From the NCBI GenBank assembly GCA_964035545.1, contig OZ037768.1, positions 17,281,875 to 17,345,874 of the forward strand: DNA of 64,000 bases, read 5' to 3'. Positions 2,289 through 27,138 of the stretch are shown here, piece by piece. The translations under genes were made by a program, and so were the position numbers. This DNA is from Bugula neritina (lineage: Eukaryota > Animalia > Bryozoa). How positions within the stretch are numbered: position 1 is the first letter of the stretch; each line of letters begins with the position of its first letter. The notes under the pieces are model-generated. The model ran no database searches and was not told where the DNA came from. It saw only the letters and a list, made by a program, of their open reading frames with translations.

Positions 2289-3007
2289 TTAGTACCAGAA
2301 ATACCAATATATCCAACCCCAACGCAGTCCCTGAAGCAAGATTATAAAATAGAAGGATTACACCACAAAAATGCTATTACAATTGATTCAATAGTTTAGC
2401 TTGTAAATGCATCTGTTTTTATATTCCCCATTATTACGAAATTATTTATCGAACTATAAACATCAAAATTACAACTTTTTGACAGGTGTTTTCTTGTTTT
2501 TAAATTTGAATTTTGATACCATTGCTTACCACAACAACACAAGCAGCAATGAAGATAGCTGTTCCAATGCCAAGGGTCCAGCCGGTCCAGCATTTAGCCT
2601 GGTACATTCTTTTTCTGTAGCTAACAGAGTTTCCTCTCTCTCCCTCATGTTTAGCTATCATAGCATGAACCAATCCAACTACTCCACATGGCAGACAGCA
2701 GAAGATGGTGGCCAGAATGCTCCACACATACCAACATGTGGTGCTTGATTGGTCAACCTGGAATATTCAAGGAGTAACAGAAAATAAACAACAAACATTT
2801 ATACATACATATAAATGAAAAGAGAGCTACAATACTTATCCCACCATAGCTGTTGAGTGTAATAATATGTGTATAATGTTATACCTGAGTAACAGGCATC
2901 ATAACAGCAGTGTGCTGTTGGTAAACGGGTGGAAGTGTGCCTTGTGGGCTGGAAAAGTATGCTTCTTGCTCCTTAGTCATCTCTGGTGCCACTCCGTTTG
3001 TTGTCAT
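2289..3007 (-). CDS. CD225/dispanin (IFITM/PRRT-like) membrane protein, cluster gene 1, ~130 aa, short Trp/Tyr-rich C-tail
   Basis: Exons 3007-2885 (MTTNGVAPEM...GTLPPVYQQHTAVMMPVTQ|gtat), 2757-2530 ([77 protein letters not shown]|gtaagc) and 2330-2289 (cag|GLRWGWIYWYFWY*). All junctions are phase-0 GT-AG. The FCCxPxG...G[ND]...AKxW pattern with two hydrophobic segments is the CD225 signature. Exon 3 is the least certain part. Confidence 0.8.
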
Positions 3008-3219
3008 GATTTCTTCAAACAAAGAATATATGAAAATATTTTAAATAAACATCAGTATTATACTATATTAATGGCACAACAAGCATGTAATTAAAAGAAA
3101 ATGCAGTTGAGTTTAAAATGGCAAACCTACCTACTGCTGCAGGCAAAAGCACGTCAGGACAATATGAAGTTAGAAATGAATATGATAGCTCCACAACTAA
3201 TCGATAAAAATACAGGTCA

Positions 3220-3229
3220 GTCACGTGAC
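3220..3229. promoter_or_regulatory. Palindromic E-box / CLEAR-type motif GTCACGTGAC upstream of CD225 gene 1
   Basis: Exact GTCACGTGAC about 90 bp upstream of the putative non-coding first-exon donor (gtaggt at ~3130), with CCAAT at ~3236. Motif match only. Confidence 0.4.
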
Positions 3230-4374
3230 GAATAACCAATTAGAAACCTTGACAATTAATGCATGATTAACCATATCAGTTTACAAGAGATGCATTGTGC
3301 CTTGTGCTTTGGGAGGCAAGTGAATGCATCATTTATTTGGTTTATTTATTTAGCTTTTCTCACATGATGCAAAAATCAATATTCTATGGTTTGATTATAT
3401 TGTATTCATTATATAATCGGAATAGGCTATATATAGGTCTGCTTGACCTATATAATTGTTTTGCTAGTTCAGCTAAACTAAGCAGCTCAATTGATCCGTT
3501 TAAATTCGCCATTAGTTAATGAGTATTATAAGCCATAAGATGTACGGAGCATGAATACCTATAGCATGCACGTCATATATGATGATTCACACAAGCATGC
3601 AGGGTACATATCATTATTATGTTAGTAATTGCGCAAGAACTAGTAAGTTCACATGCAGATAGTAAAGTTTTAATAGCTGCACATGTAATAGTGCAGCTGT
3701 TCTTTGGTAGGCTAGTAGTATATTATTAGTAGGAACGAAAAAGTAAAGCAACCTGTTACATCAAATTCCAATAACTTAAGCTCCTGAAACATGTCCACAT
3801 TGCAAATAGCACTATAGGTGCAGAAGTGGAGAAATTTGAATAGCCTGGATTCTTTAACTTTATAGATGAGCATTTTGGGACATGAGCTAAAACTCCCCCT
3901 AGAACATGGTACATTTCTAACCTAGAACACAGGATATTTCTCTATTTTTTTGTTATTGAACTGTCCACCAATTGACAGTTTTGAAAAGTGCCTCATTAAT
4001 TTTAATATTATTTTATAGTTTGTGCATTTTGTTTCCCTATTCGTAGAACAATAATTCACAGATATTTAACCAACTGTATTTGTAATTACAAATTTGATAA
4101 AGTTGCACTAATAGTTATAAAAACAATAATAGATAACATAATCTAGCTAAATTTAGTGTTGTCATTAAGCTCACTTAAATATAATGGCTGTTATTGTAAT
4201 CACAAACAAGATAACTGTGTTTTATATGTAATGATAACTAAATAAAAATTGCAAAAATCAGCCTCACTAGTTACTACTTTATACAGTGAATTAGTAATGA
4301 ACTTATTGCAACATGTTGCAACATATTGTTATTGCAACTTATTACACAACAGAAAAAAATGGTTGAATTAAACC

Positions 4375-4712
4375 CAGGGTGTTCAACACTTTCACTGAAA
4401 GGGAATATTTCGGTAGCTATAAAGGCCACTTTGTAAAATTTCGTTTGAGTTGGGGGCCACGGCATGAGTATTTTTCAAATTATTTTACCCCAAATTTCTA
4501 TGAATCATTGTGCAACAAAGTCCCAATAATTACTTCTTGCTGCCTGTTTTGTATATATATATAGCATGTATATATATAAGACATCTAAAATCTGGTTTTT
4601 CCACTCTAATTCATATATGTGTGCAAAATAACTTTATTTGTTATGCCTCTGAGGGCCACAATATAGGCTGGGGGCCTCATTCAGCCCTAGGGCCGCTTGT
4701 TGGACAGCCCTG
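4375..4712. mobile_element. Non-autonomous hAT/Charlie-like MITE
   Basis: Imperfect TIRs CAGGGTGTTCAACA... and ...TGTTGGACAGCCCTG. Flanking 8-mers ATTAAACC and ATTTAAAC match at 6/8, consistent with a decayed 8-bp hAT TSD. No coding capacity. Confidence 0.55.
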
Positions 4713-24114: not shown

Positions 24115-24653
24115 TGTTTCATAGAAACCTACATTTCACAATTATTTTTAGTTTAATTTTTGCAATCGCTAATCAAGTTTCAAGTCTCTTTCATATAAAC
24201 ATTATATGCAGTATACCTGATTTAGTGAGTTAACTATTGCGTCTAGTTGCTAACAGTTCCACTAATTAAACAGGCGAACAAACTTACCTGATAGACAGAG
24301 TAATGGCAACTAAGTTTTACCTGTGCTTCAGCTCCTATGAGCTCTGAAATCAATAGGTTTAATCTGTTAGCATTGCCATAAAAACATTGGTAGTGAAAGC
24401 AAAAAAAGTTCTATGCACACTTGGGTCAACAAAATCAAAAGAAATTATCCAATATCATGAATTGATTGATCGACCACGGCCATATTAAGTGAACCTGTTT
24501 AAACATTCCTTTCAAACATATTATTCTATATTCCTTCTGCCAAGAATAACTAGAATGACATTGCAAAATACATTTACATATGTTCAAATAGAAACCTCGG
24601 CCTAAATATAAGAATATTTACATAATAGCCATTGGAGATCCTTTGGAATAATT

Positions 24654-24717
24654 TTCTATAACCTGGTAGTTTACAAAACCTGCCATGGCATGTTTTGCAA
24701 ACTACCAGGTTATAGAA
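24654..24717. repeat. 64-bp near-perfect palindrome
   Basis: TTCTATAACCTGGTAGTTTACAAAACCTGCCA|TGGCATGTTTTGCAAACTACCAGGTTATAGAA: 32-bp arms, 2 mismatches, no loop. Confidence 0.9.
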
Positions 24718-25484
24718 TGGGTTGTTGCATAGAAGTTGCTGCAGTTGAAAAAATCAATACCCGTCATGCAAGTAATGGAATATTATATAATAGCTTTAAC
24801 TAATGTACTTCATGTACTCAGTCAAATGGAGAAGCTTAATGAAGAATTCATCTGTTCAGCTTGAATGAAAAACATATCACAGTTATATTGTTTAGAGTGA
24901 ATAAGACATACTTCATGACTTTGTAGCCACGAAAGTATGCTTTGGCAATAATTTATATTAAGGAAACAAAAAGACAATTCTGAGAAATTATTTATAGATT
25001 ACAAAAGCTAGGAAATACTGCAACTATTATAGAATTTTGTGAAATAGTATAACCTTATGCAATGCGTTGCATAGACTAGTATAGTTTTGCTAACAACAAA
25101 ACTGCATAAAGTTTTTCAGCTGCTATGAGCTGTTTTCCCTTATATTGCACTTATAATATGTATATTTTGTATATACAGTACAACATAGGCAGTGTCTTTA
25201 TCTAAAATGACAGTTTTGCACTTTTATAGTAATATTTTGGCTGTAATAAATACAACAGCAAACTGAGAGATCTATCAAATATAAGCTTTATTTTGTGGAT
25301 TGTATAAAAAATATATAATAAATATATATATGAAAAATATTAAAAACACAATGCACAAGCTATGTGATTTTCACAATAAGGTAAATAGCATCAAGGCATT
25401 ATATGTAACATGAAACCTTCAAATATTCTTAAAATAATATTGTTTTTTAATGGTGACCTTCAAACATCATTGAAATATTGTTTT

Positions 25485-27138
25485 TTAATGGTGACCTCCA
25501 TGTTTACCATGACCCCTATGACCTCCATGACCCCCAGGACCTCTGTGACCTCCATGACCCCCAGGACCTCTGTGACCTCCATGACCCCCAGGACCTTTGT
25601 GTCCTCCAGGACCTCTGTGCCCATCAATATTATCTTCATGCCTGTCTTCATGCTCCCCTACTCCACCATCACCACTATGTCCATCAAACTCATCATTTTC
25701 TTCCACTGTGTGGTGATGGTCAAAATCTCTTTCTCCATCACCCTTACTGCCATGTTTACCGTAAGGACCCACACTATCAGTTGTGCTGTAACCCACATAG
25801 TCATTTAGTGGGAATGCATCTTCCACATACCATCCACTTGAAGATCTCCTGGTGCAGGCTAAACCCATCTACAAAAAATGTACTGGTGAAATATCTTTAT
25901 ATAAAGTAAAAAGACGTCTCCAGAACTTTATTTGTAGATCTCGCAAGTAAGTTCACGGCAAGGTTGTATTTGTTGCATTCAAAAGTGAAGCCAAAAATAT
26001 GTTATAACGTACCATAATGAGAAATATTTTAATTTTAAATTTGCAGTTTGTATCTAGAAAGCTAAGTACAAGATACCAAACTATATAGACATTAAACTAG
26101 TTATGTAAAATTGCTTTTAAAAATTTAAATACAATGCTTATAACTATTAGCTGTGCTAGCATTTCTATAGACAGTGCATAATTTACACTTTCTGTAATAC
26201 ATGATGGTCTAACTCTAACCCATAACTTTTACGAAGTCACATTTTCAGCTCATACGCTTACTAAAAATAACAAAATAATAATGTAATGCAAAACTGTATA
26301 AGCAAATAAAGAAATAAACTGAGTTTCTGGTTTGCCTAGTAAATGACATCAGCATTTAATAAAGGACTAGTTAATCATATAAACACGAATAGAAGCAGCT
26401 ATATATATATTGTGTTCTATATTTTATACCAGTACTCCAATCAGTATCAGCGATGCAACTCCTAAGCCAATAGACCAAGATGTCCAGCATTTGGCTTGAT
26501 ACAGCCGTCGTCTGTGACCAACAAAGTTCCCTTTCTCTCCCTCATGTTTAGCTATCATAGCATGAACCAGTCCAACTACTCCACATGGCAGACAGCAGAA
26601 GATGGTGGCCAGGATGCTCCACACATACCAACATGTACTCCCAGGTTGCTTTCTCTAAAATAATCTTACTCTTTTATTGCGCTGCTCTTTATTTGTTGTG
26701 AACTCATCTTAATTTATTGTGTTGAAAGGTGTCAGATGTTGCATATTGATGTACTTACTAATTAAGAGTATTCTATAGGTTACCTATAGGTTATGTGTGA
26801 TATACATGGTTACACACTCCGCGCCTTGTTACATACTGTATATATATCTTACGACATACAATATACTATATACACTTAATATAACACTGTGTGGTATAAA
26901 CTGTAGATACATTTTGCAACTAATAACTTTTTTAAGAATATTAGTTGAAATATATGCCTGCCACCCACGAAGAACCGTAGTGAAAGGTGACCCTTAATTA
27001 AAATATTATATTAGTATAACATACCGGTTCGGGTTGAACTACTGTTACATGTTGAGCTGGTGGAGGTTGGGAAACAGGAAGAGGAAGGGTGGATGACTCC
27101 TCCTCTTTTGGCTTCTCAACTCCTACTTTTACTTTCAT
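25485..27138 (-). CDS. CD225/dispanin membrane protein, cluster gene 7, ~240 aa, Gly/His-repeat C-tail
   Basis: Exons 27138-27025 (MKVKVGVEKPKEEESSTLPLPVSQPPPAQHVTVVQPEP|gtatgt), 26654-26430 (75 codons, the same length as in genes 2, 3 and 6; donor gtataa) and 25868-25485 (ttttttgtag|MGLACTRRSSSGWYVED...(GHRGPGGHG)n...GHGKHGGHH*). Phase-0 junctions. Confidence 0.82.

What the first reader, a model, noticed from the sequence alone, without database searches (positions are those of the whole stretch)
2289..27138. Seven-gene CD225/dispanin cluster: constant membrane anchor with hypervariable exon-3 tails
Seen: seven genes share one layout (N-terminal exon, 72-76-codon CD225 exon, phase-0 intron near the end of the second hydrophobic segment, terminal exon). 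The terminal exons run from 13 to 127 aa and differ completely in chemistry: GLRWGWIYWYFWY (gene 1); Tyr-rich with NGT sequons (genes 2-4); acidic/Tyr (gene 5); ([12 protein letters not shown])n (gene 6); (GHRGPGGHG)n (gene 7). The ORF track shows the two His-rich exons as unrelated ORFs and misses most of the cluster. Known: CD225 proteins (IFITM1-3, PRRT1/2, TRARG1) modulate membrane fusion, have a cytosolic N-terminus and loop, and usually only a very short lumenal C-terminus. Inference: this is a diversifying invertebrate family that uses a dispanin anchor to display varied low-complexity peptides at the cell surface or in the endolysosomal lumen, possibly for innate immunity/antiviral restriction, metal or pH sensing, or matrix/biomineral interaction. 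I know of no described CD225 family with such tails but cannot run a search.
Basis: partly seen in the sequence, partly recalled or inferred. Interest (0 to 1): 0.9.

Follow-up and report, generated by a model that had tools for sequence, protein, structure and literature searches.

The report
Bryozoan dispanin genes with variable tails
The moss animal Bugula neritina has seven neighbouring genes that join a conserved IFITM-like (CD225) membrane anchor to very different acidic, aromatic or histidine-rich tails that probably face outside the cell; the family is real and I found no paper on it, but its function is untested.

Summary
Window 2289-27138 (Bugula neritina chromosome 4) carries seven three-exon genes. 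Each exon 2 (72-76 codons) passes Pfam CD225 at 44-52 bits. All 14 introns are phase 0 with GT..AG. Exon 3 encodes 13-127 residues.

The indirect evidence is:
- A collinear sister-lineage contig has an annotated protein that joins the gene 7 exons at these junctions, and one whose length fits the gene 6 exons.
- Gene 6's tail is under purifying selection (dN/dS 0.10) and differs by an in-frame two-unit repeat indel.
- A Watersipora RefSeq gene has the same intron position.
- Intron-free ~1 kb contigs from other samples (one with a poly(A) end) encode this anchor plus tails of about 20-100 residues.

- Exon 3 first completes membrane helix 2.
- The tails are not unrelated. Six of the seven open with an acidic Tyr/Trp box; gene 1's tail is aromatic only.
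- Genes 2-4 and their relatives add N-glycosylation sites (13 seen, 3.4 expected).
- Genes 6-7 add an acidic spacer and a His-rich tip.
- Gene 5's exon 2 is homogenised with genes 2-4.

Best reading: bryozoan dispanins that expose glycosylated or polyanionic tails outside the cell or in endosomes. Immune, metal or mineral roles are untested. The scan earlier noted CD225-WSC fusions elsewhere in this genome. I found no paper on either.

The parts
2289..3007 (-). Gene 1 (130 aa): exon 1 2885-3007, exon 2 (CD225, 76 codons) 2530-2757, exon 3 2289-2330 (13 aa, Trp/Tyr-rich, plus stop)
   Evidence: Pfam 44.4 bits. GT..AG at both introns, phase 0. Exon 1 found by scanning for an ATG followed by a donor site; it carries a PPxY-like box. 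The tail exon is the least certain of the seven: no orthologue was available, and it is supported only by splice signals and by similar short aromatic tails in P0004, P0154 and P0155.
9109..10560 (+). Gene 2 (146 aa): exon 1 9109-9219, exon 2 10042-10266, exon 3 10456-10560 (34 aa, Tyr-rich, 2 NxS/T)
12041..13491 (+). Gene 3 (146 aa): exon 1 12041-12151, exon 2 12973-13197, exon 3 13387-13491. Near-identical copy of gene 2.
   Evidence: (units 98-99% identical).
15005..16504 (+). Gene 4 (160 aa): exon 1 15005-15115, exon 2 15932-16147 (72 codons), exon 3 16349-16504 (51 aa)
   Evidence: The tail aligns with the Watersipora P0003 tail (35% over 43 aa, E 0.009). It differs from gene 2 by three in-frame indels.
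20259..21216 (-). Gene 5 (144 aa): exon 1 21127-21216, exon 2 20735-20950 (72 codons), exon 3 20259-20387 (42 aa, acidic/Tyr)
   Evidence: The tail end matches the tail of transcript-derived P0153 (55% over 20 aa, E 6e-4).
22603..24114 (-). Gene 6 (211 aa): exon 1 23989-24114, exon 2 23443-23667, exon 3 22603-22887 (94 aa: acidic/Tyr box, Asp/Trp 12-mer repeats, His/Lys tip)
   Evidence: Against the sister lineage, dN/dS is 0.06, 0.09 and 0.10 for exons 1, 2 and 3. The sister copy has 24 more residues, in frame. The annotated 235-aa sister protein equals 42+75+118.
25485..27138 (-). Gene 7 (240 aa): exon 1 27025-27138, exon 2 26430-26654, exon 3 25485-25868 (127 aa: acidic/aromatic start, acidic spacer, Gly/His/Pro 9-mer repeats)
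   Evidence: The orthologue KAF6026954.1 (P0001) joins the three exons at these same junctions. dN/dS is 0.24, 0.29 and about 1.0 for exons 1, 2 and the non-repeat part of exon 3, with one 3-nt indel.
22676..22835 (-). 36-nt x4.4 coding tandem repeat (12-residue Asp/Trp/Lys/His unit) in the gene 6 tail
   Evidence: TRF. The sister lineage has two more units.
25491..25613 (-). 27-nt x4.6 coding tandem repeat (9-residue Gly/His/Arg/Pro unit) in the gene 7 tail
   Evidence: TRF. The array is longer in the sister lineage, with two frame slips in that older PacBio draft.
8003..16881 (+). Tandem triplication of a ~2.95-kb unit (8003-10957, 10953-13888, 13884-16881) that produced genes 2, 3 and 4
   Evidence: Self-BLAST. 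Per-feature identities: units 2 and 3 are 98-100% identical; unit 2 against unit 4 gives 86-92% in non-coding DNA, 97% in exon 2 and 87% in exon 3.
20753..20960 (-). 208-nt tract (the last 10 nt of intron 1 plus most of gene 5's exon 2), 97% identical to exon 2 of genes 2-4 while the flanks are unalignable. Probable gene-conversion tract.
   Evidence: dS about 0.10; no similarity upstream.

Best explanation
The cluster is seven genuine genes of a bryozoan-specific branch of the CD225/dispanin family (six distinct ones plus one near-identical copy). Each protein has four parts:
- a short cytosolic N-terminal exon, with a P-x-Y/H-T-A-V box that resembles a YxxPhi/PPxY sorting signal;
- one exon holding the whole conserved CD225 core: the first hydrophobic helix with an invariant Cys-Cys pair, the basic loop, and most of the second helix;
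- a last exon that finishes the second membrane helix;
- a tail of 11 to about 120 residues continuing from that helix on the far (extracellular or lumenal) side.

Six of the seven tails begin with an acidic Tyr/Trp box; gene 1's short tail is purely aromatic. Genes 2-4 and their relatives (subfamily A, which also includes gene 5) follow the box with N-glycosylation sites; gene 5 itself has none. Genes 6-7 (subfamily B) follow it with an acidic spacer and a His-rich, Gly/Lys/Pro-containing tip built from tandem repeats.

The cluster grew by tandem and inverted duplication. The anchor exon is held constant by purifying selection and, for gene 5, by gene conversion. The tail exon drifts through in-frame indels and repeat slippage.

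Shown: the gene structure, family membership, conservation pattern and sequon enrichment. Inferred: the orientation, glycosylation, possible tyrosine sulfation, and the role. My reading of the role is that the anchor displays a glycosylated or polyanionic, cation- or ligand-binding peptide at the cell surface or in endosomes.
For: Family and structure:
- Pfam CD225 for all seven exon 2s. All introns GT..AG and phase 0.
- The genome is B. neritina tzBugNeri2.1, 216.00 Mb.
- A contig of the 2020 B. neritina draft is collinear with the window (RecQ, gene 7, gene 6) at about 88% nucleotide identity. Its AUGUSTUS models, built with transcriptome hints, join the gene 7 exons at these junctions (P0001); a 235-aa model has the length expected of the gene 6 exons.

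Coding constraint on the tails:
- Gene 6 tail: dN/dS 0.10 at dS 0.35, with an in-frame 72-nt indel.
- Gene 7 tail: one 3-nt indel in 249 nt, against nine indels of mixed length in 560 nt of intron.
- Gene 2 against gene 4 tails: three indels, all in frame.

Other bryozoans:
- The Watersipora subatra RefSeq gene has the same three exons and the same intron 2 position.
- Intron-free ~1-kb contigs from other samples encode full-length relatives with tails of 20-100 residues. One has an adapter remnant, AATAAA and a poly(A) end.

Helix and orientation:
- The AlphaFold2 model of P0003 runs helix 81-145 straight through the exon 2/3 joint, with pLDDT 88-90 up to residue 120.
- Sequons: 13 in 368 tail residues against 3.4+-1.7 in shuffles (0 of 5000 shuffles reached 13). 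Only 1 in the 562 non-tail residues of the five database relatives.
- Paralogues in this genome carry C-terminal WSC or mucin-like parts.
- Acidic/aromatic composition of the tails.

Gene conversion.
Against: The sister-lineage and Watersipora proteins are gene models, not proofs. Gene 1's 13-residue exon has no comparative support; a gene-1-like metagenome contig showed no aromatic downstream exon. Gene 7's distal tail evolves at dN/dS about 1, and the older draft shows frame slips in its repeats, so that part may be under little constraint. The sequon test uses related sequences, so its P value is inflated. Orientation, glycosylation, sulfation and any binding are untested. No domain or look-alike was found for the tails.
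Confidence: 0.6

Rival explanations
1. These are IFITM-like restriction factors. The proteins sit in endosomal membranes, sent there by the N-terminal YxxPhi/PPxY-like box. They block virus or parasite fusion as IFITM3 does. The aromatic/acidic tail, lying on the lumenal leaflet next to the membrane, tunes that effect.
For: CD225 core with the invariant Cys-Cys pair. A P-x-Y-T-A-V box in exon 1 of genes 2-5 and their relatives, and PPxY in gene 1, P0004 and P0005, recalls IFITM3's PPNYEML (from memory). Tandem expansion is typical of immune genes. A CD225 gene changed 2.18-fold in infected Fredericella.
Against: The nearest solved relative is PRRT1, not an IFITM (E 5.6e-4), and RefSeq names one relative 'PRRT1B-like'. 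Genes 6-7 have His in place of the Tyr of the box. No positive selection was seen in the anchor. No expression or infection data exist for this cluster. Bryozoans have no known interferon system (general knowledge).
Confidence: 0.15
2. These are carriers for secreted matrix or metal-binding peptides. The tail is cut off next to the membrane, for example after the Arg-Arg in gene 7, and released into the cuticle, skeleton or adhesive. There the Asp-rich and Gly/His-rich repeats bind calcium or transition metals, like other repetitive low-complexity matrix proteins.
For: Asp/Glu make up 38% of the gene 6 tail; Gly 28% and His 15% of the gene 7 tail. The tails contain tandem repeats whose copy number varies. 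Arg-Arg directly after helix 2 of gene 7 is conserved in the sister lineage. Both Bugula and Watersipora build a cuticle and skeleton (general knowledge).
Against: No signal peptide. A two-helix anchor is an odd way to export a matrix protein. The basic site is not conserved in gene 6. No paper pairs CD225 with skeletal proteomes. Genes 1-5 have short glycosylated tails that are not matrix-like.
Confidence: 0.12
3. Some tail exons are not real or not functional. Transcripts of some genes, above all gene 1, end by reading into intron 2. This gives ordinary short-tailed dispanins of 1-9 extra residues. The downstream ORFs are chance or decaying sequence.
For: Every intron 2 has an in-frame stop 1-11 codons after the donor. 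Gene 1's exon 3 is only 13 codons and lacks comparative support. The distal gene 7 tail has dN/dS about 1. No reads were laid.
Against: Gene 6 tail dN/dS is 0.10. The annotated gene 7 orthologue joins the tail exon at the proposed junction, and a 235-aa model has the length of gene 6's three exons. Tail homology reaches Watersipora and transcript contigs. All tail indels are in frame. In genes 4 and 5 exon 2 holds only 13 residues of helix 2, so exon 3 is needed to span the membrane. Open frames of 94 and 127 codons are unlikely in DNA of about 30% G+C.
Confidence: 0.08
4. The tail is cytosolic. The repeated Trp-acidic motifs of gene 6 and the Tyr/acidic boxes act as adaptor-binding signals, in the way kinesin light chain binds W-acidic motifs or clathrin adaptors bind theirs. 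The proteins would then be trafficking adaptors on vesicles.
For: The D-W-D-D-D and E-E-W strings in gene 6 resemble W-acidic cargo motifs (from memory).
Against: Sequon enrichment in the homologous tails of genes 2-4 and their relatives. WSC and mucin-like C-terminal parts in paralogues are extracellular modules. The loop before helix 2 is strongly basic, so the positive-inside rule puts the tail outside.
Confidence: 0.05

Closest known systems
PRRT1/SynDIG4 and other dispanin C/D members (CD225, PF04505)
   Same: Same domain. PRRT1 is the best solved-structure match to the family profile (9zks, E 5.6e-4, profile positions 42-118). RefSeq names one Watersipora relative 'PRRT1B-like'. The dispanin paper also finds invertebrate dispanins closest to subfamilies C and D.
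   Different: PRRT1's domain ends 4 residues before its C-terminus and its long part is N-terminal. Here the N-terminus is 30-42 residues and the C-terminus is long. The intron position also differs.
IFITM3 (dispanin A)
   Same: Two hydrophobic segments, a conserved Cys pair next to the first one, and a basic loop. The short cytosolic N-terminus has a Tyr-based box that resembles PPNYEML. Tandem gene clusters.
   Different: IFITM C-termini are a few residues long. The published conserved splice site lies between the two helices, whereas here both helices share one exon. No interferon context. Sequence is closer to PRRT1.
CD225-WSC fusion genes of the same genome (chromosome 5 cluster; KAF6029935.1, annotated 'KREMEN1')
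   Same: The same idea: a CD225 anchor first, with the displayed part after helix 2 on later exons. Seen here in L012 and L011 and in earlier scan notes.
   Different: Their CD225 exon is only 31-41% identical to this cluster's. They carry folded, disulfide-rich WSC domains rather than low-complexity tails.
Membrane-tethered His/Gly repeat regions such as the prion protein octarepeats, and repetitive low-complexity matrix proteins (analogy only, from memory)
   Same: Short Gly/His/Pro repeats held at a membrane surface, varying in copy number. Asp-rich or His-rich composition of the kind that binds metal ions.
   Different: No sequence relationship. The anchor is different (GPI or none). Binding was not tested here.

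Membership tests
CD225/dispanin (Pfam PF04505) | Profile match above the curated gathering score | tested here: met
   All seven exon 2 translations score 44.4-51.9 bits against a cut-off of 27.1, covering profile positions 7-67 of 68.
CD225/dispanin (Pfam PF04505) | Two hydrophobic helices joined by a short conserved basic loop | tested here: met
   Alignment A1 shows the conserved core. The AlphaFold2 model of relative P0003 has helices 44-76 and 81-145.
CD225/dispanin (Pfam PF04505) | Conserved cysteines at the first hydrophobic segment (palmitoylation sites in IFITMs) | tested here: met
   The Cys-Cys pair is invariant in 14 relatives (C57, C58 of P0003) and present in all seven window genes. 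Palmitoylation itself cannot be tested here.
CD225/dispanin as described in PMC3282796 | Very short C-terminus (under 10 residues) | tested here: not met
   Exon 3 adds 13-127 residues. Fifty-eight other CD225 representatives have a median of 12 residues beyond the equivalent point, against 19-119 in the ten closest relatives.
CD225/dispanin as described in PMC3282796 | [quoted passage not shown] | tested here: not met
   Both helices lie on one exon. The introns sit before helix 1 and inside the last third of helix 2. The Watersipora gene has the same layout.
IFITM subfamily | Induction by interferon or infection, and restriction of virus entry | not testable with these tools
   No reads could be laid, and no paper covers Bugula CD225 genes.
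IFITM subfamily | N-terminal PPxY plus YxxPhi sorting box | tested here: inconclusive
   P-x-Y-T-A-V in genes 2-5, PPxY in gene 1, His in place of Tyr in genes 6-7. These are short motifs whose function is unknown.
PRRT1/SynDIG (dispanin C/D) | Long proline-rich N-terminal region before the CD225 domain | tested here: not met
   First exons encode only 30-42 residues.

The most novel reading that the evidence does not exclude
Bryozoans may have turned the dispanin module into a general 'constant anchor, exchangeable ectodomain' cassette. The supporting facts are a symmetric phase 0-0 anchor exon kept uniform by gene conversion, and last exons that diverge freely into glycosylated Tyr-rich, Asp/Trp-repeat, Gly/His-repeat, WSC or mucin tails. 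On this reading, the cluster studied here supplies a variable surface coat used for recognition of self, symbionts or pathogens in a colonial animal that fuses, rejects neighbours and houses bacterial symbionts.
Probability: 0.12. Interest if true: 0.8.

Novelty: new variant of a known kind. Interest (0 to 1): 0.5.

Why it matters
Dispanins (IFITMs, PRRT2, SynDIG, TMEM233) are studied as small membrane modulators whose C-terminus barely leaves the bilayer. This cluster shows a lineage in which the same module serves as an N-terminal anchor for a C-terminal exposed part, and in which that part changes quickly while the anchor is held constant. The CD225-WSC and CD225-mucin genes of the same genome show the same pattern. 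This gives a natural test of dispanin orientation. It also offers compact membrane-tethered Asp/Trp and Gly/His repeat peptides for metal or pH binding studies, and candidate surface molecules in a phylum whose immunity, allorecognition and symbiont handling are almost unknown at the molecular level. The functional significance remains speculative until expression and localisation are known.

Tried and rejected
They were masked in local BLAST, although one local script had printed 40 bases of them before masking.
- The look-up of sequencing runs found only 5-6% word shares in possible RNA runs, which is not interpretable without laying reads.
- Protein search with the gene 7 tail alone gave nothing (the length window excludes full-length proteins). 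The tail region of P0001 found only itself.
- ESM Atlas look-alikes for both His-rich tails: none. Pfam on the gene 4, 6 and 7 tails: none.
- tblastx and blastn between upstream regions found exon 1 homology only for genes 6 and 7. The other first exons were found by motif and donor scans.
- A gene-1-like metagenome contig (L030) showed no aromatic downstream exon.
- I could not reach the part of the sister-lineage contig that holds genes 1-5, because that look-up needs an exact spliced protein.
- Spliced (joined) models were never searched.
It was rerun from the stored files.
- I considered positive selection on the tails and rejected it: no comparison gave dN/dS above about 1, and the counts are small.
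- I considered that the frame slips in the sister lineage's gene 7 repeats mean a different real tail. I judged them more likely homopolymer errors of a Canu assembly of raw PacBio reads with one Pilon round, but this is not proven.

Full report
WHAT IS THERE.
The window is G000:C4:17281875-17345874 of a 216,009,554-base assembly in 321 sequences. This matches the published Bugula neritina assembly tzBugNeri2.1 (216.00 Mb, 320 scaffolds plus the mitochondrion; PMC11480708). The closest database protein is also from B. neritina.

Six-frame ORFs and in-frame extension show seven copies of a CD225-type open frame. With the exon limits given below, each one passes the Pfam PF04505 gathering score (44.4-51.9 bits against 27.1). 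The first Pfam run used ORFs truncated at internal start codons, and that made genes 2-6 look sub-threshold.

GENE MODELS.
The downstream frames read 13, 34, 34, 51, 42, 94 and 127 codons.

First exons were located in three ways:
- conservation between genes 6 and 7;
- a shared M-T-K...Y-T-A-V pattern in genes 2-5;
- an ATG-plus-donor scan for gene 1.

The final models are listed. All 21 exons have lengths divisible by three, and all 14 introns are GT..AG and phase 0. The products are 130, 146, 146, 160, 144, 211 and 240 residues. Gene 5's limits were read off; its splice sites were not re-tabulated. Orientation is gene 1 minus, genes 2-4 plus, genes 5-7 minus.

IS THE SPLICING REAL?
I could not obtain read evidence. 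The possible RNA runs hold only 5-6% of the sampled words. The case for splicing therefore rests on four kinds of comparative evidence.

(a) Sister lineage. A contig of the 2020 B. neritina draft (GCA_010799875.2) is collinear with window 21543-32433 (RecQ helicase, gene 7, gene 6) at 85-89% nucleotide identity, introns included. [quoted passage not shown]
- That draft's AUGUSTUS models were built with transcriptome hints.
- They give a 266-aa protein (KAF6026954.1 = P0001) that joins exon 1, exon 2 and exon 3 of gene 7 at exactly the proposed points.
- They also give a 235-aa protein whose length equals 42+75+118, the three gene 6 exons in that lineage.

(b) Selection (Nei-Gojobori, window against the sister contig).

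| Gene | Exon 1 | Exon 2 | Exon 3 |
|---|---|---|---|
| Gene 6 | 0.06 | 0.09 | 0.10 (dS 0.35) |
| Gene 7 | 0.24 | 0.29 | about 1.0 (non-repeat part; 16 non-synonymous against 4 synonymous changes) |

- Gene 6's tail exon differs by an in-frame 72-nt difference of two repeat units. Its intron 2 is 86% identical, with six indels of mixed length.
- Gene 7's tail has a single 3-nt indel in 249 nt, where its intron has nine indels in 560 nt. Most of its changes lie in the distal half.
- The sister draft shows two one-base frame slips inside the Gly/His repeat. Its last frame ends exactly like the window's. That assembly came from raw PacBio reads with one polishing round, so I regard these slips as probable errors, though this is not proven.

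(c) Another genus. Watersipora subatra RefSeq proteins (P0003, P0004, P0005, P0007, P0154) are the next closest relatives, and all sit on one chromosome. The P0003 gene has the same three exons. Its second intron falls at the same point, and its exon 3 opens with the same T-L-Y-V start as gene 4.

(d) Transcripts. Contigs of 900-1040 nt from Logan and JGI samples carry uninterrupted full-length reading frames of further relatives (P0008, P0010, P0153 and others). One has an adapter remnant, an AATAAA signal and a terminal A run. Because the genes have introns in both sequenced genera, these contigs are spliced mRNAs. They carry tails of about 20-100 residues after the anchor.

Tail homology across species is weak but detectable for subfamily A. 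Gene 4 against P0003 gives E 0.009, and gene 5 against P0153 gives E 6e-4. Gene 6 against P0010 shows only motif-level similarity.

Gene 1's 13-codon exon remains the least secure of the seven.

1. Exon 3 is not only a tail. The AlphaFold2 model of P0003 (mean pLDDT 67) runs one helix from residue 81 to 145 through the exon joint, with pLDDT 88-90 up to residue 120. The first 2-12 residues of every exon 3 are hydrophobic. In genes 4 and 5, exon 2 contributes only 13 residues of helix 2. The exposed tails are therefore about 11, 30, 30, 40, 30, 91 and 122 residues.
2. The tails share a theme. Six of the seven tails, like their relatives' tails, start with a box of Tyr/Trp interleaved with Asp/Glu; gene 1's is aromatic only.
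   - Subfamily A (genes 1-5, Watersipora, JGI contigs) continues in most members with clustered N-x-S/T sites: 13 in 368 tail residues against 3.4+-1.7 in shuffles, and 1 in the 562 non-tail residues of the five database relatives. The sequences are related, so the significance is overstated. Genes 1 and 5 have no such site.
   - Subfamily B (genes 6-7, P0008, P0010, P0152) continues with an acidic spacer and a basic, His/Gly/Pro-rich end.
3. Genes 2, 3 and 4 are a tandem triplication of a 2.95-kb unit. Genes 2 and 3 are 98-100% identical throughout. Between genes 2 and 4:
   - non-coding DNA is 86-92% identical, exon 2 is 97% and exon 3 is 87%;
   - dN is 0.012, 0.025 and 0.107 for exons 1, 2 and 3;
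   - the three tail indels are all in frame.
4. Gene 5's exon 2 is 97% identical to that of genes 2-4 over 208 nt (dS about 0.10). Its flanks and first exon are not alignable with theirs. Gene conversion of the anchor exon is the simplest explanation.
5. The first exons carry a conserved P-x-Y/H-T-A/T-V box. It overlaps a PPxY in gene 1 and in two Watersipora proteins.

CONTEXT IN THE GENOME.
The genome holds at least 25 CD225 exons. The seven in this window are the only ones above about 70% identity to each other. The others fall into three groups:
- A chromosome 5 cluster, whose members continue into WSC-domain exons. L012 is collinear with KAF6029935.1, which matches Pfam WSC (E 1.3e-12) plus CD225.
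- A chromosome 6 pair with a 498-codon Ser/Thr-rich frame and a repeat-rich frame directly after the anchor.
- Short-tailed copies.

Earlier notes of this scan describe the CD225-WSC family on other pieces of this genome. I confirmed only L012 and L011. WSC and mucin-like parts are extracellular modules, so these paralogues support a C-terminus that faces out.

COMPARISON WITH WHAT IS KNOWN.
The dispanin paper states that the C-terminus is under 10 residues and that a conserved splice site lies between the two helices (PMC3282796). Neither holds here.

Among 58 other CD225 cluster representatives, the median length beyond the equivalent point is 12 residues and six have 20 or more. The ten closest relatives have 19-119. 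One of those, P0002, is a read-through of an intron in a genomic contig.

The best solved relative is PRRT1, whose domain ends 4 residues before the C-terminus. Full-text searches gave the following:
- CD225 with bryozoans: only one differential-expression mention, in Fredericella.
- Interferon-induced transmembrane proteins with Bugula: no paper.
- CD225 with skeletal proteomes: none of the listed papers contained CD225.

The tails match no Pfam family, no protein in the searches I could run, and no ESM Atlas cluster.

HOW IT MOST LIKELY WORKS.
Shown: a conserved two-helix CD225 anchor, and a last exon that completes helix 2 and adds a variable tail. The anchor is under purifying selection. 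Constraint on the tails is weaker and uneven. Tails change by in-frame indels and repeat slippage. The anchor exon has been homogenised in one case.

Inferred:
- The orientation is N-terminus in, C-terminus out, as in IFITM3 and PRRT2. The evidence is sequon clustering, the paralogue ectodomains and the basic loop.
- The tails of genes 2-4 are N-glycosylated.
- The Tyr-plus-acid boxes are plausible tyrosine-sulfation sites.
- The Asp/Trp repeats and the His-rich tips of genes 6-7 form a polyanionic stalk with a pH- or metal-sensitive end.

I therefore read the family as dispanin-anchored display of short glycosylated or charged peptides at the cell surface or in endosomes. What these peptides bind is unknown. 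The rivals are antiviral restriction, release of the tail as a matrix peptide, partly spurious tail exons, and a cytosolic tail. They are scored separately in the Rival explanations section.

VERDICT.
The family is a new variant of a known kind: a CD225 anchor with long, variable C-terminal tails. It is conserved across at least two cheilostome genera, present in databases only as unnamed models, and I found no paper describing it. The lack of RNA, localisation and functional data, together with the earlier finding of related CD225 fusions in this genome, keeps the score moderate.

Noticed in passing
window 35892-39944 (+): A single uninterrupted 1350-codon ORF with the look of a Ty3/gypsy-type retrotransposon gag-pol: CCHC knuckles, protease, reverse transcriptase and integrase motifs. 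It coincides with the G+C-rich block (0.43-0.46) in the composition profile. Observed only.
   Followed up: no
window 5418-6665 (-): A 415-codon ORF with reverse-transcriptase motifs (a non-LTR retroelement fragment) lying between gene 1 and gene 2.
   Followed up: no
window 29127-31010 (-): An intron-less 627-codon RecQ-type helicase gene next to gene 7. The same neighbour is present in the sister-lineage contig, where Pfam finds DEAD, Helicase_C and RecQ_Zn_bind.
   Followed up: partly
L012 1498-3083 and L011 1489-2641 (G000 chromosome 5, about 3.69-3.75 Mb): CD225 exons followed on the same strand by WSC-domain exons, collinear with KAF6029935.1 (annotated 'KREMEN1'). They belong to a cluster of at least 13 CD225 exons. 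Earlier scan notes describe this family.
   Followed up: partly
L022 and L021 (G000 chromosome 6, about 15.07-15.08 Mb): Two CD225 exons whose open frame runs on without an intron. One continues into a 498-codon Ser/Thr-rich (mucin-like) stretch, the other into a 202-codon repeat-rich stretch. P0015 (588 aa) is a related long-tailed protein from ENA contigs.
   Followed up: partly
L026 7860-8100 (sister-lineage B. neritina draft): The annotated C-terminus of KAF6026954.1 reads out of frame through the Gly/His repeat because of two one-base slips relative to the HiFi assembly. This is probably an assembly error that propagated into the deposited protein.
   Followed up: partly
L029 97-480 (-) and 6205-7261 (-): In Watersipora subatra, at least three genes of this family lie within 11 kb, in mixed orientation. 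The clustered arrangement is therefore shared with Bugula.
   Followed up: partly
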